64,000 bases of DNA from Salpingoeca rosetta (GCA_033442325.1 JAWQFM010000017.1:919125-983124), one strand, 5' to 3'. Numbered from the stretch's first letter, positions 24,988 to 62,662 are shown. Made by a program: numbers and translations. The notes: generated by a model not told the origin, from the letters alone.

Positions 24988-27900
24988 ATGATGAGGTGTT
25001 GTGGTGGTGGTGGTGGTCGCAAACACCTCCTCACCATCAACATCAACAGCACCACTTGTTCTGCCATCATGACCGCTTGTTCTGCCATCCCCACCATGGT
25101 GTTGTTTGCGTTGCTGCTGCTGCTGTCGCCGGTGGCTGCGGCGTGTGAGTGCGATGCGGGTGCAAGGACGACGATGCTTGATTGCTCGAACCAAGGCCTG
25201 ACTGCGCTGCCCACAGGCGTTTTGCGGCAGTGCCCCAAGCTGCGCCAGCTGGACGTGAGCGACAACCAGCTGACCTCGCTTGACTGGACTGAGTTCCCTG
25301 CCGGGGAAGCGCAGTTGACCGCGCTGGAGACGCTCGTGCTTTCCAACAACAAGATCACGCGCGTGATTGGCACCGCAACACAAGTGGTCCTGCCCGCGCT
25401 CACGACAATGGACCTGAGCTACAACCAGCTGTCCGACATGGAGGCGGCCGCGTTTCAGCACGCCGTGCCCAAGCTGGCGTCCCTTGACCTCAGCAACAAC
25501 AACCTGCGAGCTGTCTCCGCCGCGTGGCTGCAGCACCTCCCAGATTTGGAAGGCTTGTCCCTGAGCGCAAACAACCTCACACACCTCAACGGCAACCCGT
25601 TTGTTCACCAGACGCGCCTGGCCCAGCTCGATCTGCGCCAAAACCGCATCAGCGTCCTCGCTGCAGGCTACTTCAAGGGCCTCTCCAGCTTGGACCAGCT
25701 CCTGCTCAGCGAGAACGCCATCGCTACCCTGCCGGCGGACGACGTGTTTGTGGGCATGCCCGTGCTGAAGGGCCTCAACCTTCGCGGCAACCTCCTGCAC
25801 TCCCTCAACGCGTCCACCTTCAGCGGCAGCCTGGCTGCATCGCTGCAGGAGCTCGACTTGTCACGGAACCGCTTTGCCACCACCGCCACCATCGTGGACG
25901 TCCTGCGCACGCTGACGCTGCTGTCCTCCATCGGCCTCGCTGGCAACCGCCTTGACGCCGTTACGGCCGCGTTTATCGGTGCCATGCCCGCGCTCACCGA
26001 CCTCTCCCTCAACAGCAACCGCATCACGGCGCTGCCTGCAAACGTGTTCGCTTCTGCAGGTCCGGGTCTGCGGTTTGTGGATCTCGCCAACAACGCCATC
26101 CCAGCGCTGCCGGAGAACGTGTTCAGGCCCGTGCGCCGCCTGACCAGCCTGCGTGTTGCAGGCAATCGTATCACCTCCGTCCCGCCAACCGTGTTCCGGG
26201 GGCTCACCCATCTCCAGGGCATCGACCTCAACTTCAACATGCTCACCTCCCTGCACGAGGAGACGTTTCGCGGGCTGTCGCAGCTTGTTGGACTGTACGT
26301 CAACAGCAACCGCCTGTCCGCCCTGCCGCCCACGGTCTTCCAGGGCCTGCCCAACCTCAAATGGCTGTTCATGAGCAACAACACCTTCACCACGATCGAC
26401 GCGTCCCTCTTCTTCAACTTGCCCGCCCTCAACATCATCCTGCTCAACCACAACGCGCTCACGGACATCACGGGGGACTGGCTGCGCATCACCAACCTCA
26501 CTACCATCGCCCTGCACAACAACAACTTTGCCACCGTCTCTGCTCCCCTCAGCGCACTCTTGCAGCACGAGCGCACACAGATGTTCAGCATGCTGCACAA
26601 CCCGTCCGTGTGTGTGCGCGGGCTCGACCCCGACACCCGCGCCGTCGTTCTGCGATGTGATTGCGCAGAGGGCTACTTTGGCACGAGCACGTGCACGCCG
26701 CTGAGCGATGTGGTTGTGTTCCGCACCATCTTCTCGGCACAGGCCGGTATCATCCTGGAGAACAAGCGACTGCAAGGTGGTGAGTTCACAGCAGACCTGA
26801 GCAACCTCCCATCCACCCCCGAGCAGGGGCCCAACCTGTTTCCCTTCAACCTCACCCTCGTCACCAGCAGCGGTGGCAGTGACACTGGTAGCGATGGTAG
26901 CGATGGTGGCAATGGTGGTGTTGATGGAGATGGTGGCAGCCAAGGACCTTCCTCGGCAACAACAACAACAACAACAACAACAACAGCAGCAGCGGTGACG
27001 ACCTCGCACGTGACCGTTGAGCTGCCTGTTGTGCTGTCTGCGTTTGCCGTGCAGGGCCAGGTGTTACCTGATGCTGTGGACTTCGACGCTCCCGTCCCCG
27101 CCCGCGATGTTGTCTTGGACACCTTGGCTGTGAACCAGCCGCTGCCCTTCGTGGACTTGGACGTGCAGCCAAACCCGTACATCCCCACCAATATCACCTT
27201 CGCCGTGCATGGAGAATTGCCTGCAGGCATCGCCAACACGACGCGCGCGGACGGCTGGCTGGAGGGCACGCTGCTTGAGGCGGGCCGGTTTGACTTCACC
27301 ATCGTCGGCACGGATCTGTTCACGCTGGAGAGCAAAGCTGTGGCGCACGTGACCCTTGCCGTGGCCAACTGCGGGCCCTCCACGTGCCTCAACGCAGGAA
27401 CGTGCGTGAACCACAACCCGGACACACCGGACGACAACGCCTTCCACTGCCAGTGCCGGTCTGCCTTTGCCGGCCGCTTCTGCGAGAAGGACCGCGCCGT
27501 TGTGTCGCGCGGTGTTGACCCGGCCCGCCTACGCGATGGTCTCATTGGCGCTGCGTTTGCCGCCGCTGCCGTCGTGCTGCTCGCCTGGTGGATCCAGCGC
27601 GAGCGCCTGAAGAAGTCGTACCACGTGTTTGTGAGTTATCGCCAGGCAACAGATGCGCCACTTGCTGAGCGGGTGGTGCGTGCGCTTCAGGCATGCACGG
27701 TGGACGGGCAGCCGCTGGTCGTGTTCTGGGACCGGCTCTCGATTGAGGTTGGCGACAACTGGCAGCTCAAGTTTCTCAGCGGAGTGCATCGATCGTGCAT
27801 GTTTGTGCCCATTGTCTCCAACGCCGGCGTGGCAAACATCGAGCGGGTGAGCGTGTTCGACAGCAAACCAGACAACGTGCTGCTTGAGTACGAGACGGCG

Positions 27901-28587
27901 CTCTCGCTGCATCGCAAGCGCCGAATTGGTATTTTCCCCCTCTTCGTGCAGGGTGGCGGTGGTGGTGGCGGTGGTGGTATGAGCAGTGATGTGGGTGCTG
28001 GTATGAGCAGTGATGTGGGTAGTCATCAGGTGGGTGGTGGTGGTGGCGGCGATGGTGGCGGGGCTATGAAGCGTGGGTGTGGTGCTGGTGGTGGTGAGCT
28101 GTTCAACTTTGACTATGACCGCTTTCCGAACGGGCCGAGCAAGACGAACAAGAACGTGCCGGTGTGCGAGACAATGAAGCAGCTGTTTGCCATCCAGGGC
28201 CTCTTTGTTGACAGCGAGCGGGGGCTGAGCGACAGCGACGTCACCACGGTCATGTCATACTTCACCAGCAAGGTGTGGAACGGGCGGGGACACAACAAGC
28301 AGCAGCCGCGCAAGGAGCAGGGGCTGGGACTGAAGCGCCACTGGCACAGCAACGCCAGCAGAAGCCGGCGGGCACGCGGTGTTGTGGGCGCACTCGTCAC
28401 GCCCCGTAACTGGCGCCGTGGCCATGGTGATGATGGTGGTAGTGCTGGTGATGGGGATGGTAGTGGTGACGCGTGGGTTGGTAAAGGTGTTGGTGTTGAT
28501 GATACTGTTCACACGACAACAGCACCAACAACAACAACGACGACGACGACGCTCACACAGCCACTTCTTGCTGACGAGAGGGTGTAA
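24988..28587 (+). CDS. Intronless Toll-like receptor-architecture protein: signal peptide, LRR-NT, ~17 LRRs, Cys cap, He_PIG/Ig-like domain, EGF, TM, SARM1-like TIR
   Basis: Single 1199-codon ORF; likely start at Met 25096 (MVLFALLLLLSPVAAA). LRR-NT CECDAGARTTMLDCSNQGLTALP is followed by repeated LxxLxLxxNxL. The Ig-like segment GELPAGI...GWLEGTLLEAGRFDFTIVGTD lies at ~27190-27365, the EGF CGPSTCLNAGTC...CQCRSAFAGRFCE at ~27370-27490, the TM at ~27538-27594, and the TIR YHVFVSYRQ...VFWDRLSIEVGDNW...FVPIVS...DNVLLEYETAL at ~27616-28270. Confidence 0.9.
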   Translation: MMRCCGGGGGRKHLLTININSTTCSAIMTACSAIPTMVLFALLLLLSPVAAACECDAGARTTMLDCSNQGLTALPTGVLRQCPKLRQLDVSDNQLTSLDWTEFPAGEAQLTALETLVLSNNKITRVIGTATQVVLPALTTMDLSYNQLSDMEAAAFQHAVPKLASLDLSNNNLRAVSAAWLQHLPDLEGLSLSANNLTHLNGNPFVHQTRLAQLDLRQNRISVLAAGYFKGLSSLDQLLLSENAIATLPADDVFVGMPVLKGLNLRGNLLHSLNASTFSGSLAASLQELDLSRNRFATTATIVDVLRTLTLLSSIGLAGNRLDAVTAAFIGAMPALTDLSLNSNRITALPANVFASAGPGLRFVDLANNAIPALPENVFRPVRRLTSLRVAGNRITSVPPTVFRGLTHLQGIDLNFNMLTSLHEETFRGLSQLVGLYVNSNRLSALPPTVFQGLPNLKWLFMSNNTFTTIDASLFFNLPALNIILLNHNALTDITGDWLRITNLTTIALHNNNFATVSAPLSALLQHERTQMFSMLHNPSVCVRGLDPDTRAVVLRCDCAEGYFGTSTCTPLSDVVVFRTIFSAQAGIILENKRLQGGEFTADLSNLPSTPEQGPNLFPFNLTLVTSSGGSDTGSDGSDGGNGGVDGDGGSQGPSSATTTTTTTTTAAAVTTSHVTVELPVVLSAFAVQGQVLPDAVDFDAPVPARDVVLDTLAVNQPLPFVDLDVQPNPYIPTNITFAVHGELPAGIANTTRADGWLEGTLLEAGRFDFTIVGTDLFTLESKAVAHVTLAVANCGPSTCLNAGTCVNHNPDTPDDNAFHCQCRSAFAGRFCEKDRAVVSRGVDPARLRDGLIGAAFAAAAVVLLAWWIQRERLKKSYHVFVSYRQATDAPLAERVVRALQACTVDGQPLVVFWDRLSIEVGDNWQLKFLSGVHRSCMFVPIVSNAGVANIERVSVFDSKPDNVLLEYETALSLHRKRRIGIFPLFVQGGGGGGGGGMSSDVGAGMSSDVGSHQVGGGGGGDGGGAMKRGCGAGGGELFNFDYDRFPNGPSKTNKNVPVCETMKQLFAIQGLFVDSERGLSDSDVTTVMSYFTSKVWNGRGHNKQQPRKEQGLGLKRHWHSNASRSRRARGVVGALVTPRNWRRGHGDDGGSAGDGDGSGDAWVGKGVGVDDTVHTTTAPTTTTTTTTLTQPLLADERV

Positions 28588-59557: not shown

Positions 59558-62500
59558 TCACATGTAGGCATCAACAAAGCTGGCCACCACGACCACGGCC
59601 GGATCTGGCATGTCTGCGAGAAAGGAGAGAATGTCCAGCTGCCCCTGCGAAGACGAGAAGCACATGTCCAAGCACTGCTCAAACACAGCGTGCCTGGTTG
59701 TATCCAGCTTCGTGCTGCACCGGCGTGCGTCACTGCCATTGCGGTTGGCCCCAGCCTCTGTCTCCCGCAGGGCGTGAAGCACCCCCAGGGACAACTGCCG
59801 GAACGCAGCGCTGCAATCGCGTTGCGCAGAAGGCGCGCCTTCCTCCTCCTCCTCCTCCTCCTCCTCCTCCTCCTCCCCCTGCTGTTGCTGCTGTGCATGC
59901 TGTTGGAGGTGAGGTCCATCGTCACGCTTCTCCTTCGTCGCCGTCTTCTTCGTCGCCGCCTTCTCGCTGAGTGCAAAGCCGGCATGCAGAAGCCACTCTG
60001 CATATGTGTGATCGGCAACACGCTCGTCATCAAAGGCAAATCTGCTGCCACTGCCGCTGCTGTTGTGGCCACTGCCGCTGCTGTTGTTGCCACTGTTGCT
60101 GCTGGGGCTGTGGTGGCCCTCAAGTCGTGCATCACGACCACCCTTCGCCTCGCCAGCGTCACCATCTCTCGCCACACCATCATCAGCATCGCTATTGTGG
60201 CCAGATGAAGCGAGGGCAGCAGAGGCGGCCGCGTGCGGCAACAGCTCGTGCAGTGGGGCCGTGTCGATGTCAAACCCCGTCAGCGCCAGCACGGCCTGCA
60301 TGATGGCTGCGGTGATGAACTGCGCGCCAACAAAGACGCGTGCTCGTCGCAGGTTCCGCGCGGCGCTGTCCTGCAGCCGCTGGTGCTCGTCGTCCGTGCG
60401 CACGTCGCCGTAGCGCGGGAAGATGTGGTCTGGCTCTGCCAGCAGCGCGTCGAAGAAGTGGATGGTCTCTGCCATCGCCCGCAGCCATGCGTGGAGAAGC
60501 GTGCACGTGGCTGGCCCGCGCAGGGCGGCCCCCTGGTATGGCAGCTGCGCGTGTGCGTTGGTGAGGAACACGCGCGTGTCCTTGGCGGCAAAGTGGCCCA
60601 CCACCTTGGTGGCCAGCCGGCACGCGCTCTCCACCTTCTGCTTGATGGTGCGCTGCAGGACGGCGAGCGGCAGCGGCCTGAGGAAGGGCAGGTCCTCCAC
60701 GCAGATGCGCATGCACGTGTCGTACAGGGCAGCGAGGGTGCTGTTGTTGGTGGGCAGGAAGGGGGTGCATGCCCGGATGCAGGTACACACGTGCAGCAGG
60801 TGCACCTCGTCAAGCCAGGGCCCCAGGATGTCCATGGCGACAACGCAGGCGAGAAACTCGTTCAGGCCGGGTGTCTCTGCGTGGAAGGGCAGCACTGCAC
60901 CGGGCGCAAAGCCAAACAGGCGGTAACACAGCTGCTGCGCGATGGCCCGCTTCTCCTTGCGCACGGCCGGGGTGAGGGCGCCCGACCAGCCCCACACGTG
61001 CTCGCGGTGGCTGATGGTGCGCAGACCGTGCGTCTGCTCCACATCCTCCCGCCACCACAACATGACGCAGCCCACTGCCGTCATCACCTCGTCATCCTCA
61101 TCGCCGCCGCCGTCGCCTGAGCGGGGTGCAGGGGACAGGCTCGGTGTTCGCGTCGATGGCGGGGTCATCATGGCTGGCGACAGCAGCGTGTTGGCCAAGG
61201 GGAGGCTTGGCGTTGGATTTTTGTGCTTTGCGTCGGTCGCAGGCGTAGCCTTCTTGTGCGCTGCTGTTGAGTGGTTGGTGGCATGCATTGGTGTCGTCAG
61301 TGCTGCCATGGCGGGGCTGCTGATGCTGCGGTGGTAATGTTTGTGAGGGCCTGCGTCGTCGCTGCTGCGCTTGCCAGCAAACCTGCCAGATGTGCTCTTG
61401 AGGCGGCGCATGCGTCGGCTGTCCTGGCTGATGTCGTCGTGGCCGGGGAGCGGCACGCCGGCCATAAGGGCCAGGCCCCGCGGTCGACAAAGCGCGGCTT
61501 TGCGGGCCTCGTGGCATCCATGCAGTGGCATGAGCTGCGGCATTGCCTCGACACGCTGCACCGTGTAGTCCTGCAGCAAGCTCGCTCTCTCCTGCCGCCT
61601 GCGCCTCTGCCATCGCCGGAGGCTAGCCGTGTTCTTGCTTGAGTGAATGGATGATGAGTGAATGGATGATGAGTGGATGGATGATGAGCGCGTGTGCGAG
61701 CTGGTGTCGTCGTGCGTCTCGGCGCGTGCGTCACCCTCGATGGCTTTGCCAAAGCTCTCACAGCAGGGATGTTCTTGGGACTTGCCATCTTGTTCTTGGT
61801 GGTGGTGGTGGTGGTGGTGTCTGTAGCCATGTGCGTGTGATGATCCTGCTTCTCGCGCACCTCCTCCTTGTTGTCGTTCTGCTGCTGCTGTTGCTGTTGC
61901 TTCTTCTTCGTCCACCTCTTCCTGGTCTTGTGGGTCGTGGCGCGGTTCACCCCGTTGAAGATCGGCTGGCGACGGCAGTGGGATGAGGCGGGCCCGGTGC
62001 AGGAGCGGGAGGAGGAACGGCGCAATGTGCTCGTGCGTCTGCAGGAAGACTGTTTCCCGGAAGATGCTTGCGAGGAACACGGGCGCATCGGCGACAATGT
62101 CTTCTTGAGTGGCGTTGAAGATGTGAGGTGCTGGCTGAGCGCAGTGGTTGTTGTTGTTGTGGCTGCTGCTGTGGTGATTGCTGCGGTGGTGGCGACGGTG
62201 CGCTGATGCGCTTCCAACTAGTTGTGGTTGCTGGTGCTGGTGCTGTTGGTGCTGTTGGTGTTGGGTGGCGATGGCAACAACTGCAAGCTCCGCAATCTTG
62301 AAGATGACCTCTGGCGGAATGCTCAAGGCCATGGCTTGGAACGCGCACGCGACGTGGCCGGCAAGCGTGTGTACTTGGCGCTCCATGGCGGCGGTGAGCG
62401 TCAGCACGCTGGCATATGCAGGGGCCGTGAACATGACTTCGCGATGCTGGTTGAGCATGGCTGCATGTACGTTCATGTGTGCCGTGGCCTCGTGCCAGGA

Positions 62501-62662
62501 GGCAGGAAGGAAGGGCGTATTGGGGCAAGGGCTGGGGCAGGCAACGCGAAACTGAACACGCCGCCGCCCTCCTTCTTTCACACCTCCGACTCTCAGCAGG
62601 TGGCGTGTGTGCTCTGTGCTTCTTTGTAAGTGAGCGGTGGTTTGCATCAACACCCACAACAC
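59558..62662 (-). CDS. Long intronless hypothetical protein; real start may be downstream (~62476)
   Basis: 1034-codon uninterrupted ORF with coding-like composition and no microsatellite introns. No family recognised. Confidence 0.7.
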   Translation of the reverse strand: MLWVLMQTTAHLQRSTEHTRHLLRVGGVKEGGRRRVQFRVACPSPCPNTPFLPASWHEATAHMNVHAAMLNQHREVMFTAPAYASVLTLTAAMERQVHTLAGHVACAFQAMALSIPPEVIFKIAELAVVAIATQHQQHQQHQHQQPQLVGSASAHRRHHRSNHHSSSHNNNNHCAQPAPHIFNATQEDIVADAPVFLASIFRETVFLQTHEHIAPFLLPLLHRARLIPLPSPADLQRGEPRHDPQDQEEVDEEEATATAAAERQQGGGAREAGSSHAHGYRHHHHHHHQEQDGKSQEHPCCESFGKAIEGDARAETHDDTSSHTRSSSIHSSSIHSSSIHSSKNTASLRRWQRRRRQERASLLQDYTVQRVEAMPQLMPLHGCHEARKAALCRPRGLALMAGVPLPGHDDISQDSRRMRRLKSTSGRFAGKRSSDDAGPHKHYHRSISSPAMAALTTPMHATNHSTAAHKKATPATDAKHKNPTPSLPLANTLLSPAMMTPPSTRTPSLSPAPRSGDGGGDEDDEVMTAVGCVMLWWREDVEQTHGLRTISHREHVWGWSGALTPAVRKEKRAIAQQLCYRLFGFAPGAVLPFHAETPGLNEFLACVVAMDILGPWLDEVHLLHVCTCIRACTPFLPTNNSTLAALYDTCMRICVEDLPFLRPLPLAVLQRTIKQKVESACRLATKVVGHFAAKDTRVFLTNAHAQLPYQGAALRGPATCTLLHAWLRAMAETIHFFDALLAEPDHIFPRYGDVRTDDEHQRLQDSAARNLRRARVFVGAQFITAAIMQAVLALTGFDIDTAPLHELLPHAAASAALASSGHNSDADDGVARDGDAGEAKGGRDARLEGHHSPSSNSGNNSSGSGHNSSGSGSRFAFDDERVADHTYAEWLLHAGFALSEKAATKKTATKEKRDDGPHLQQHAQQQQQGEEEEEEEEEEEEGAPSAQRDCSAAFRQLSLGVLHALRETEAGANRNGSDARRCSTKLDTTRHAVFEQCLDMCFSSSQGQLDILSFLADMPDPAVVVVASFVDAYM

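What the first reader, a model, noticed from the sequence alone, without database searches (positions are those of the whole stretch)
24988..28587. Toll-like receptor architecture (LRR-Ig-EGF-TM-TIR) whose TIR resembles a SARM1-type NADase with the catalytic Glu intact
Seen: one intronless ORF with signal peptide, ~17 LRRs, an Ig-like (He_PIG-type) domain, EGF, one TM and a cytoplasmic TIR. Its TIR (YHVFVSYRQ...VFWD...FVPIVSNAGV...KPDNVLLEYETALS...IFPL) aligns by eye with SARM1 TIR (DVFISYRR...VFID...FVLVLSPGAL...KDWVHKEIVTALS...IVPI) better than with animal TLR TIRs. The Glu in DNVLLE (codon 27886-27888, residue 967 of the ORF) sits at the position of SARM1 E642. Established: TIR NADases (SARM1, plant TNL, bacterial Thoeris/anti-phage TIRs) need this Glu and are activated by oligomerisation, whereas canonical TLR TIRs act as scaffolds. 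Inference: a cell-surface sensor that couples ligand (perhaps bacterial) binding directly to NAD+ cleavage or cADPR-like signal production, in a close unicellular relative of animals. From memory, LRR-TM-TIR proteins were reported in some choanoflagellates but not the model species; this needs checking.
Basis: partly seen in the sequence, partly recalled or inferred. Interest (0 to 1): 0.88.

Follow-up and report, generated by a model that had tools for sequence, protein, structure and literature searches.

The report
Choanoflagellate LRR receptor with SARM1-like TIR
This is a real, expressed gene of the choanoflagellate Salpingoeca rosetta for a Toll-like-looking surface receptor whose inner TIR domain is of the enzyme-type (SARM1-like, catalytic glutamate kept) rather than the animal TLR type, so it may signal by cleaving NAD+, but both the architecture and TIR catalysis in this species were already reported.

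Summary
The ORF 24988-28587(+) is real. It encodes 1199 aa: signal peptide, about 18 LRRs with Cys caps, a poorly defined middle region, a six-Cys EGF, one TM helix and a TIR_2 domain carrying a Gly-rich loop insert.

An 85-sequence profile of the TIR hits SARM1 first among solved structures (E 6.5e-10) and no TLR TIR at E<=1. It aligns E967 with SARM1 E642. An AlphaFold model (pLDDT 85) superposes on the SARM1 TIR (Z 17.6, 1.9 A over 138 residues). E967 is invariant in all 85 relatives.

The Trp of the WxxxE motif is Asn here (DNVLLEYE).

The genome is S. rosetta. A paralogue with the same NxxxE motif, UniProt F2UB80, was shown in 2026 to make cADPR in E. coli. LRR-TM-TIR proteins in choanoflagellates were reported in 2018.

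The TIR belongs to a protist-wide clade. In choanoflagellates that clade is joined to swapped ectodomains (LRR, Kelch, TNFR, furin-like) and to kinases.

Verdict: observation confirmed, NADase coupling plausible (about 0.5) but untested, a new member of known kinds, moderate interest.

The parts
24988..28587 (+). Complete ORF, 1199 aa plus stop. In-frame alternative starts lie at 25069 (M28) and 25096 (M37, context CACCATGG).
   Evidence: the identical 1199-aa protein is on record; low-level RNA reads of the orientation expected for a + strand transcript run along the ORF
25069..25143 (+). Signal-peptide hydrophobic core (residues about 28-52), ending AAA just before the first Cys cluster
   Evidence: hydropathy scan
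25144..25233 (+). N-terminal Cys cap of the LRR domain (C53, C55, C66, C82)
25240..26568 (+). About 18 leucine-rich repeats (residues 85-527), period about 24
   Evidence: Pfam LRR_8 E 7e-76; regex scan
26599..26694 (+). C-terminal Cys cap (NPSVC...C.C...C, residues 538-569), conserved in the Hartaetosiga and metagenomic orthologues
26695..27357 (+). Middle ectodomain region with a Gly/Ser/Thr-rich mucin-like stretch. There is only a weak He_PIG-like signal at 27178-27354.
   Evidence: He_PIG E 0.016, below cut-off
27370..27483 (+). Juxtamembrane EGF-like domain, six Cys (residues 795-832), conserved in the orthologues
27538..27594 (+). Single transmembrane helix (residues 851-869)
27616..28278 (+). 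TIR domain (residues about 877-1097) of the TIR_2 / NxxxE clade
   Evidence: Pfam TIR_2; AlphaFold model at pLDDT 85; SARM1 TIR Z 17.6; profile hit to SARM1 at 6.5e-10
27751..27753 (+). BB-loop Gly922, aligned with SARM1 G601. Asp915 aligns with D594.
27874..27876 (+). Asn963 at the position of the WxxxE tryptophan (SARM1 W638). It is Asn in nearly the whole family.
27886..27888 (+). Glu967, the putative catalytic glutamate on helix alpha-C. It aligns with SARM1 E642 and is invariant in 85 of 85 relatives.
27955..28110 (+). Gly-rich low-complexity insert (residues about 990-1041) in the loop after strand beta-D. It is disordered in the model. Paralogue L002 carries a much longer insert at the same point.
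28279..28584 (+). Low-complexity C-terminal tail ending in a conserved LTxxLL(acidic) motif

Best explanation
The gene encodes a type I membrane receptor of Salpingoeca rosetta. From outside to inside it has a signal peptide, a Cys-capped LRR ectodomain, a mucin-like or uncertain middle region, an EGF, one TM helix and a cytoplasmic TIR.

It is the S. rosetta member of the choanoflagellate 'TLR-like' LRR-TM-TIR receptors. Its TIR is not of the animal TLR/IL-1R/MyD88 type. It belongs to a protist-wide TIR_2 clade marked by an invariant D-N-x-L-L-E motif on helix alpha-C, and the closest solved relative of that clade is the SARM1 NADase TIR.

Most likely mechanism (inferred, not shown):
1. A ligand, plausibly bacterial or other particulate material, clusters the ectodomains.
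2. Clustering brings the TIR domains together.
3. The assembled TIRs use Glu967 to cleave or cyclise NAD+ into ADPR or cADPR.
4. These products act as second messengers, for example on the ADPR- and Ca2+-gated TRPM2 channel that S. rosetta is known to have.

Identity and architecture are close to certain (about 0.95). Catalytic signalling stands at about 0.5.
For: Architecture.

Genome identity: locus L022 encodes six of six peptides of the UniProt F2UB80 TIR of S. rosetta.

Orthologues:
- The ectodomain aligns end to end, through the LRR-CT Cys motif and the juxtamembrane EGF, with a Hartaetosiga balthica protein and a metagenomic protein. Both have the same LRR-TM-TIR order.

TIR class:
- All 85 family members hit Pfam TIR_2 and only 13 hit TIR PF01582.
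- The window TIR has no PF01582 hit even at E<=10.
- The family profile hits SARM1 at 6.5e-10, then TIR-1, plant TIRs, Cat1 and bacterial TIRs. No TLR TIR appears at E<=1.
- The model (pLDDT 85, core above 95) gives SARM1 Z 17.6 and rmsd 1.9 A over 138 of 139 residues. No TLR is among the top 50 entries.

Active-site residues:
- E967 aligns with E642 and is invariant.
- D962, Y884, R885, D915 (= D594) and G922 (= G601) are invariant or nearly so.

Precedent:
- F2UB80, a paralogue in the same genome, has the same DNVLLEW motif and about 31% identity. It produced cADPR in E. coli (Table S4 of 10.64898/2026.04.20.719644).
- A Guillardia TIR with D-H-V-L-M-E-W was also active.

Possible downstream sensor:
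- srTRPM2 is ADPR- and Ca2+-gated (PMC6461439).
- At least six TRPM-type LSDAT loci are in the genome.

Expression: low but real RNA-seq coverage along the ORF, including the TIR.
Against: - No activity data exist for this protein.
- The Trp of WxxxE stacks on NAD+ mimetics in SARM1 and is needed for cyclisation in bacterial TIRs (10.1101/2022.05.07.491051). It is Asn here.
- The tested relative whose motif is closest to this one (Aphanomyces invadans, DNLLLEYE) showed no activity in the 2026 screen. Its construct stopped just after strand beta-D.
- A conserved Glu does not prove catalysis: the TLR2 TIR has one and was inactive.
- The ligand, the oligomerisation and the link to TRPM2 are pure inference.
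- A homodimer prediction gave no verdict.
- A 52-residue Gly-rich insert sits inside the TIR.
Confidence: 0.5

Rival explanations
1. Scaffold receptor. The TIR does not cleave NAD+. After clustering it recruits cytosolic TIR proteins by homotypic TIR-TIR assembly, as TLRs recruit MyD88. The obvious candidate in S. rosetta is the kinase-TIR protein, whose TIR is of the same subfamily, giving a short receptor-to-kinase pathway.
For: - Locus L003 (C26) encodes a kinase followed by a TIR with DNVLLEYE. It is among the closest paralogues of the window TIR in the genome.
- Richter et al. proposed exactly such a 'Kinase TIR' route.
- About 40 TIR_2 loci are available as partners.
- The BB-loop Gly and Asp also serve assembly in SARM1 (PMC8266388).
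- The Asn in place of the WxxxE Trp could mean lost catalysis.
- The Aphanomyces relative was inactive.
Against: - The alpha-C Glu is invariant in 85 of 85 relatives, across receptors, kinase fusions, and chytrid and protist proteins.
- An NxxxE paralogue from the same genome is catalytically active.
- Assembly and catalysis are not exclusive, because active TIR sites form between assembled TIRs.
Confidence: 0.3
2. True orthologue of animal Toll-like receptors. It descends from the same ancestral LRR-TM-TIR gene and works as an ancestral TLR. Its TIR merely kept the ancestral SARM1-like sequence, which animal TLRs later lost.
For: - The order of domains is the same as in TLRs.
- The architecture is said to be unique to choanoflagellates plus animals (PMC6040629) and is widely cited as evidence that TLRs predate animals.
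- TLR4 keeps a catalytic Glu in a similar E-Y-E context and makes cADPR.
Against: - The TIR shows no specific affinity to TLR TIRs by Pfam model, PDB profile search or fold ranking.
- In the TIR tree the window protein sits in a clade with 99% SH-aLRT support (quick tree, no bootstrap) among Kelch-ectodomain receptors. Other LRR-TM-TIRs fall in other clades with TNFR-type receptors, so ectodomains were swapped on one TM-TIR chassis.
- No Death domain or Rel homology domain was found in the genome. That search had no positive control.
- The published tree was unresolved.
Confidence: 0.12
3. Decaying or non-functional gene: a chance-preserved ORF or lineage-specific relic with no role.
For: - Expression is low.
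- Low-complexity inserts lie in the ectodomain, the TIR loop and the tail.
Against: - The frame is open for 3.6 kb.
- All domains are intact, with conserved Cys patterns and conserved TIR core residues.
- Colinear orthologues exist in other choanoflagellates at 24-46% identity.
- RNA reads cover the body of the gene.
Confidence: 0.03

Closest known systems
Choanoflagellate 'TLRs' (LRR-TM-TIR proteins of Richter et al. 2018, eLife, PMC6040629)
   Same: Signal peptide, LRRs, one TM helix and a C-terminal TIR. The ectodomain is colinear with a Hartaetosiga balthica transcriptome protein from the same kind of data set, including the LRR-CT Cys motif and the EGF.
   Different: That paper defined the group by domain order only and did not separate TIR from TIR_2. 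Here the TIR is shown to be of a non-TLR, SARM1-like NxxxE clade shared with Kelch-, TNFR- and furin-type receptors. I could not establish whether S. rosetta was among the 14 positive species.
SARM1 / TIR-1 TIR domain (NAD+ hydrolase and cyclase)
   Same: - It is the best solved match by sequence profile (6.5e-10) and by fold (Z 17.6, 1.9 A over 138 residues).
- Glu967 aligns with E642.
- The SYR box, BB-loop Asp and Gly, and a long beta-C to alpha-C loop of SARM1-like length are kept.
   Different: - Identity is only about 20%.
- There are no ARM or SAM domains and no octamer ring.
- W638 is Asn and R570 is Gln.
- A Gly-rich insert follows beta-D.
- The domain is tethered to the membrane behind an LRR ectodomain.
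S. rosetta F2UB80 TIR (cADPR producer; Hurieva et al. 2026, bioRxiv 10.64898/2026.04.20.719644)
   Same: - Same genome (L022).
- Same TIR_2 clade.
- Same D-N-V-L-L-E motif with Asn in place of the WxxxE Trp.
- Same extended C-terminal part.
   Different: - Identity is about 31% over the core.
- It sits in a different subclade, a multigene family of 30 or more loci with an intron inside the TIR.
- Its TIR lies at the C-terminus of a 1352-aa protein whose other domains I did not examine here.
- Its activity was measured; this protein's was not.
Animal TLR4 (LRR-TM-TIR whose TIR makes cADPR in E. coli)
   Same: A surface LRR receptor with a TIR that keeps the alpha-C Glu, and even a similar E-Y-E-x-A context.
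   Different: TLR4 has a PF01582-type TIR with WxxxE and signals through MyD88 and TRIF. The window TIR matches only TIR_2, and no Death-domain adaptor was found in the genome.

Membership tests
Animal Toll-like receptors | Signal peptide and Cys-capped LRR ectodomain | tested here: met
   LRR_8 at E 7e-76; 18 repeats; Cys clusters on both sides
Animal Toll-like receptors | Single TM helix followed by a cytoplasmic TIR | tested here: met
   TM at 851-869; TIR_2 from residue 880
Animal Toll-like receptors | TIR of the TLR/IL-1R/MyD88 type (Pfam PF01582; nearest relatives are TLR TIRs) | tested here: not met
   No PF01582 hit at E<=10. The family profile finds SARM1, plant and bacterial TIRs but no TLR TIR at E<=1. 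No TLR is among the 50 best structural matches. 85 of 85 relatives match TIR_2 and 13 of 85 match TIR.
Animal Toll-like receptors | Signalling through Death-domain adaptors or kinases (MyD88, IRAK) to NF-kB | tested here: inconclusive
   No Death (PF00531) or RHD (PF00554) match in the six-frame genome search, but the controls could not ring. Richter et al. report no MyD88 or IRAK in choanoflagellates.
Animal Toll-like receptors | Common descent of the whole gene with animal TLRs | not tested
   No tool-supplied animal TLR TIR sequences were available for a joint tree. The evidence is indirect only.
Choanoflagellate LRR-TM-TIR receptors (Richter 2018) | LRR, TM and TIR in that order in a choanoflagellate protein | tested here: met
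   genome identified as S. rosetta
Choanoflagellate LRR-TM-TIR receptors (Richter 2018) | Colinear relatives in other choanoflagellates | tested here: met
   P0020 (Hartaetosiga balthica) and P0029 align across the LRRs, the LRR-CT, the EGF and the TIR
SARM1 | ARM-SAM-SAM-TIR architecture | tested here: not met
   Pfam finds no ARM or SAM; the protein is a membrane receptor
SARM1 | TIR with the catalytic Glu at the E642 position | tested here: met
   The HMM alignment places E967 on E642. The helix spans model residues 92-105. Z 17.6.
SARM1 | WxxxE tryptophan (W638) | tested here: not met
   Asn963, and Asn in nearly all relatives
Catalytic (NAD+-cleaving) TIR domains | TIR fold with a Glu projecting from helix alpha-C | tested here: met
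   The side-chain orientation could not be inspected.
Catalytic (NAD+-cleaving) TIR domains | Intact BB loop (Asp and Gly equivalent to SARM1 D594 and G601) | tested here: met
   D915 and G922 are nearly invariant in the family and align with D594 and G601
Catalytic (NAD+-cleaving) TIR domains | Aromatic residue four positions before the Glu | tested here: not met
   The residue is Asn963. However, F2UB80 has the same Asn and made cADPR.
Catalytic (NAD+-cleaving) TIR domains | Measured Glu-dependent NAD+ cleavage or cADPR production | not testable with these tools
   The only precedents are a paralogue (F2UB80, active) and an oomycete relative (inactive, truncated construct)

The most novel reading that the evidence does not exclude
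Choanoflagellate 'TLRs' are not ancestors of animal TLRs. They are receptor NAD+ cyclases or hydrolases built on a modular EGF-TM-TIR chassis, on which LRR, Kelch, TNFR and furin-like ectodomains were swapped. Ligand-driven clustering turns on a Trp-less (NxxxE) TIR active site, and the ADPR or cADPR produced opens the ADPR-gated TRPM2 channel. That would be a direct surface-to-Ca2+ pathway in the closest unicellular relatives of animals, and it would make the TLR-like architecture convergent.
Probability: 0.22. Interest if true: 0.8.

Novelty: new member of a known kind. Interest (0 to 1): 0.5.

Why it matters
Reviews cite the choanoflagellate LRR-TM-TIR proteins as evidence that Toll-like receptors predate animals.

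Here the S. rosetta representative carries a TIR of a different, enzyme-type clade. That clade is shared with receptors bearing other ectodomains, with kinase-TIR proteins, and with chytrid and protist proteins. The 'pre-animal TLR' inference therefore rests on domain order alone and should be re-tested.

S. rosetta is genetically tractable. A paralogous TIR from it has just been shown to make cADPR, and it has a characterised ADPR-gated TRPM2 channel. Whether a surface receptor signals directly by NAD+ chemistry in a close relative of animals is thus testable with existing tools.

Tried and rejected
- **Single-sequence phmmer against PDB.** It returned only Gly-rich artefacts (nanobodies, linkers). 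I replaced it with profile searches.
- **First AlphaFold run on a 3-sequence alignment.** The model was poor (pLDDT 60) and Foldseek gave only E about 2e-3. It was superseded by the 85-sequence run.
- **Complex prediction on two copies of the TIR.** No verdict (score 0.00). This is not evidence either way.
- **RNA-read 'joints' 25019->27954 and 27977->25032.** Rejected as splicing. They link two GGN-repeat stretches, carry 14-29 foreign letters between the sides, lack GT..AG ends, and come with loose ends typical of reads from other loci.
- **The search of earlier findings near the locus.** Nothing returned.
- **Pfam on nine neighbouring ORFs.** Nothing informative, so there is no functional link from gene neighbourhood.
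- **Species table of Richter et al.** I could not tell from the text or the held supplements whether S. rosetta was scored TLR-positive.
- **Tables of Hurieva et al.** I could not tell whether this protein itself is included, because S1 and S2 are cut.
- **ESM Atlas feature search.** It gave only generic TIR_2 clusters from bacteria and protists.
- **Joint tree with animal TLR, MyD88 and SARM1 TIRs.** Not built, because no tool-supplied sequences of those were at hand and long sequences may not be typed in.
- **The best TIR_2 locus of the genome (C14, L016).** It is a SAM-TIR protein with a YxxxE motif and is not closely related. I used it only as an outgroup, on a very long branch.


Full report
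**The sequence feature**

The window holds one uninterrupted ORF at 24988..28587 on the + strand. It is 1199 aa, the longest ORF in the 64 kb. A protein of exactly this sequence is already on record in public collections, on a 1.39-Mb contig.

Pfam results and other sequence features:
- LRR_8 scores E 7e-76, and TIR_2 scores 31.7 bits, above the curated 28-bit cut-off, at residues 880-988.
- A simple motif scan finds 18 LRRs of period about 24 between residues 85 and 527.
- Cys clusters flank the LRRs: C53/55/66/82 and C542/557/559/569.
- Hydropathy shows a signal-peptide core at residues about 28-52 and one TM helix at 851-869.
- A six-Cys EGF lies at 795-832. It scores just under Pfam's cut-off when scanned alone (19.8 against 21.5 bits).
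It gives only E 0.016 and 16 bits on an isolated piece. The region also holds a Gly/Ser/Thr-rich mucin-like stretch.
- Codon 27886-27888 is Glu967 in D-N-V-L-L-E-Y-E-T-A-L.
- Three in-frame ATGs could start the protein: 24988, 25069 and 25096. The last has the context CACCATGG.

**Expression and gene model**

Three 2026 RNA-seq runs of the same species give thin coverage (0-5x, about a quarter of each run read). It is spread along the ORF, including the TIR, with the first mate on the - strand. In most stranded libraries that orientation means a + strand RNA.

No real splice joint was seen. The reported 'joints' link two GGN-repeat stretches, carry foreign letters between the two sides and lack GT..AG ends, so I read them as cross-mapping. 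One assembled contig covers 27004-28478 without gap or mismatch, that is EGF, TM, TIR and Gly-rich insert together. Whether that run is RNA is only a guess.

Reads of the opposite orientation at 24700-24959 belong to a divergent neighbour gene on the - strand.

**Which organism**

The genome has 55.4 Mb in 68 contigs. Locus L022 (C13:1705500-1707300) encodes six of six peptides, taken from Table S4 of Hurieva et al., of the TIR of UniProt F2UB80 of Salpingoeca rosetta ATCC 50818. So the window is from S. rosetta or a near-identical strain.

**What kind of TIR**

The closest relatives of the cytoplasmic part are choanoflagellate transcriptome proteins. They are 40-46% identical and carry Kelch plus ephrin-receptor-like ectodomains in front of a TM helix and this TIR.

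A three-sequence profile finds 1741 cluster representatives at E<=0.001 and 638 at E<=1e-10. Nearly all carry D-N-[VL]-L-L-E-[YW].

In an 85-sequence alignment:
- D962, E967 and P984 are invariant.
- F881, Y884, R885, D915, G922, S944 and N963 are nearly invariant.

All 85 match Pfam TIR_2 and only 13 also match TIR PF01582. The window TIR has no PF01582 match even at E<=10.

Searched against all PDB sequences, the family profile gives:
- human SARM1 TIR first (6.5e-10);
- then C. elegans TIR-1, Arabidopsis AT1G72930, Cat1, L6, Roq1, PdTIR, TIR-STING, AbTir and TcpB;
- no TLR, IL-1R or MyD88 TIR at E<=1; only MAL appears, at about 0.8.

That alignment places E967 on E642, N963 on W638, D962 on D637, D915 on D594, G922 on G601 and Y884-R885 on Y568-R569. 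The beta-C to alpha-C loop differs from SARM1's by only two residues in length.

With the 85-sequence alignment, AlphaFold gives pLDDT 85 overall and above 95 in the core. E967 lies on the third main helix, model residues 92-105.

VIA-align then ranks the structural matches as follows:

| Match | Z |
|---|---|
| SARM1 TIR (rmsd 1.9 A, 138 of 139 residues, 20% identity) | 17.6 |
| TIR-1 | 16.6 |
| plant TIRs | about 15 |
| SPARTA | 14.9 |
| IL-18R-beta | 14.2 |
| MAL | 13.9 |
| Hydra TRR-2 | 13.8 |

No TLR is among the 50 best entries.

The refuting outcomes 'does not fold as a TIR' and 'E967 does not fall on the catalytic Glu' did not occur. I could not inspect side-chain orientation.

**How SARM1-like is it**

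Only in class. There are no ARM or SAM domains and identity is about 20%. The Trp of the WxxxE motif is Asn in this whole clade. That Trp stacks on NAD+ mimetics in SARM1, and W638A lowers activity. The equivalent Trp is needed for cyclisation in bacterial TIRs.

A 52-residue Gly-rich, disordered insert follows strand beta-D. Paralogue L002 has a far longer low-complexity insert at the same point, so this loop tolerates insertions.

**The family and its architectures**

Pfam on representative hits shows the same TIR behind several ectodomains:
- Kelch plus ephrin-receptor-like;
- LRR (Hartaetosiga balthica P0020, Salpingoeca infusionum P0038, metagenomic P0029);
- TNFR Cys-rich, one with a C-terminal SH2;
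- furin-like repeats.

It also stands at the N-terminus of long proteins of chytrid fungi (Polychytrium, Physocladia, Zopfochytrium, Rhizophlyctis, Cladochytrium, Blyttiomyces) and occurs in Paulinella, Picozoa and MMETSP protists. No animal protein was among those sampled.

The window's ectodomain aligns end to end with P0020 and P0029, including the N-P-S-V-C ... C-x-C LRR-CT motif and the juxtamembrane EGF. The whole LRR-EGF-TM-TIR gene therefore has relatives in other choanoflagellates.

In a TIR tree of 91 rows (quick IQ-TREE, SH-aLRT support only), the window TIR sits in a 99%-supported clade of 11. Every other member of that clade whose ectodomain was identified (7 of the other 10) has a Kelch ectodomain. 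The other LRR-TM-TIRs fall at the unresolved base of the tree or in a 96%-supported clade with TNFR-type receptors.

The simplest reading is a modular EGF-TM-TIR chassis on which distal ectodomains were exchanged. The tree is short, and many branches are unresolved.

**The S. rosetta genome**

- About 40 TIR_2 loci are present.
- The nearest paralogues of the window TIR are a furin-like-TM-TIR (C20, L002) and a kinase-TIR (C26, L003). The latter is the 'Kinase TIR' type of Richter et al..
- Thirty or so loci form a nearly identical F2UB80-type family, with an intron inside the TIR.
- None of the other TIR loci I fetched has LRRs in the same ORF.
- PF01582 gives only two marginal hits elsewhere in the genome.
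- Death and Rel-homology domains were not found, with the caveat that the controls could not ring.

**What is already known**

- Richter et al. 2018 (PMC6040629) reported LRR-TM-TIR 'TLRs' in 14 of 21 choanoflagellates, Kinase TLRs and Kinase TIRs, no MyD88 or IRAK, and an unresolved TIR tree. They deliberately did not separate TIR from TIR_2. Later TLR papers cite this as evidence that TLRs predate animals. I could not find which species were positive.
- Hurieva et al. 2026 (bioRxiv 10.64898/2026.04.20.719644) found the alpha-C Glu in most non-TLR eukaryotic TIRs. They also showed cADPR production in E. coli by human and mouse TLR4 TIR and by TIRs of unicellular eukaryotes, including S. rosetta F2UB80.
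- F2UB80 has the same D-N-V-L-L-E-W motif, so the Asn does not preclude catalysis. It is about 31% identical to the window TIR over the core.
- A Guillardia TIR with D-H-V-L-M-E-W was active and depleted NAD+.
- An Aphanomyces TIR with D-N-L-L-L-E-Y-E, the motif closest to ours, was not active. Its construct ended right after strand beta-D.
- The TLR2 TIR, which also has a Glu, was inactive.

**Mechanism**

Shown:
- the domain order and topology;
- a TIR fold nearest to SARM1;
- an invariant Glu, SYR box and BB-loop Asp and Gly;
- an active paralogue in the same species;
- transcription.

Inferred:
- ligand binding by the LRRs clusters the receptor;
- TIR self-association forms the active site;
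- Glu967 cleaves or cyclises NAD+.

A plausible sensor for the product exists. srTRPM2 of S. rosetta is gated by ADPR plus Ca2+ and is itself an ADPRase (PMC6461439), and the genome has at least six TRPM-type LSDAT loci. The link to TRPM2 is speculation.

The main rival is scaffold signalling to the kinase-TIR of the same TIR subfamily. The two are not exclusive. I put catalysis at about 0.5, scaffold-only at about 0.3, a true TLR orthologue working as an ancestral TLR at about 0.12, and a dead gene at about 0.03.

**Verdict**

It is plausible and now has a close precedent, but it is untested for this protein, and two of its premises are out of date.

This is a new member of known kinds: the choanoflagellate LRR-TM-TIR receptors and the Glu-bearing eukaryotic TIR_2 domains.

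The part that seems not to have been said is that the TIR of this 'pre-animal TLR' is of a non-TLR, Trp-less clade shared with receptors of other ectodomains. That weakens the architecture-only argument for TLR ancestry and makes a receptor-coupled NAD+ enzyme testable in a tractable organism.

Noticed in passing
G000 loci L004, L006-L012, L017-L024 (e.g. C36:41063-44395, C13:1705500-1707300): S. rosetta carries 30 or more nearly identical TIR loci of the F2UB80 type (DNVLLEWMAM). All have an intron at the same place inside the TIR, just after the first strand. L022 is F2UB80 itself, the TIR shown to make cADPR.
   Followed up: partly
L002 (G000:C20:1165098-1168460, - strand ORF 169..3288): This is a paralogous receptor with furin-like Cys-rich repeats, a TM helix and a TIR of the same subfamily (DNFLTEMELA). 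A low-complexity insert of about 250 aa (Ser/Asp/Gln/Thr-rich) sits at the same loop where the window protein has its Gly-rich insert.
   Followed up: partly
L003 (G000:C26:707296-710811, + strand ORF 103..2070): The ORF reads as a kinase followed by a TIR ('Kinase TIR' of Richter et al.). Its TIR (DNVLLEYEMA) is among the closest paralogues of the window TIR, which makes it a candidate cytosolic partner. The kinase call is from reading the translation; I did not run Pfam on it.
   Followed up: partly
window 28534-28584 (C-terminal residues about 1183-1199): The tail ends in L-T-x-x-L-L followed by acidic residues and a hydrophobic last residue. Similar endings occur in the Kelch-TM-TIR relatives P0002, P0003, P0006, P0009 and P0013. 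This could be a dileucine sorting or PDZ-type signal.
   Followed up: no
window 23665-24880 (- strand): A divergently oriented neighbour gene starts about 110-270 bp upstream of the receptor's candidate start codons. Its exons have hydrophobic, transporter-like translations, and RNA reads of the opposite orientation cover 24700-24959. Pfam gave no hit at E<=0.001 on the one ORF of it that I scanned (24326-24877). GT/CA microsatellites flank the receptor gene on both sides (about 24330-24400 and from 28596).
   Followed up: partly
window 59558-62662 (- strand): This is the second-longest ORF of the window (1034 aa), in a 64% GC stretch. It has no Pfam match at E<=0.001.
   Followed up: partly
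window 20001-22000: GC drops locally to 0.41, against about 0.55 elsewhere. Overlapping ORFs of 258-308 aa lie on both strands at 21367-22336, which suggests a repeat or low-complexity block.
   Followed up: no
window 28052: All or most reads covering this place in the three RNA runs show G where the window has A, and some contigs of the fourth run do too. It lies inside the Gly-rich low-complexity stretch, where reads from other loci cross-map, so it may not be a true variant.
   Followed up: no
L016 (G000:C14:844500-849500, + strand ORF 2132..3343): The strongest TIR_2 match of the genome is a SAM-TIR protein with a Y-x-x-x-E motif. It runs into a TG microsatellite within the ORF. I did not establish whether it is the SARM1 homologue reported for choanoflagellates.
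   Followed up: partly
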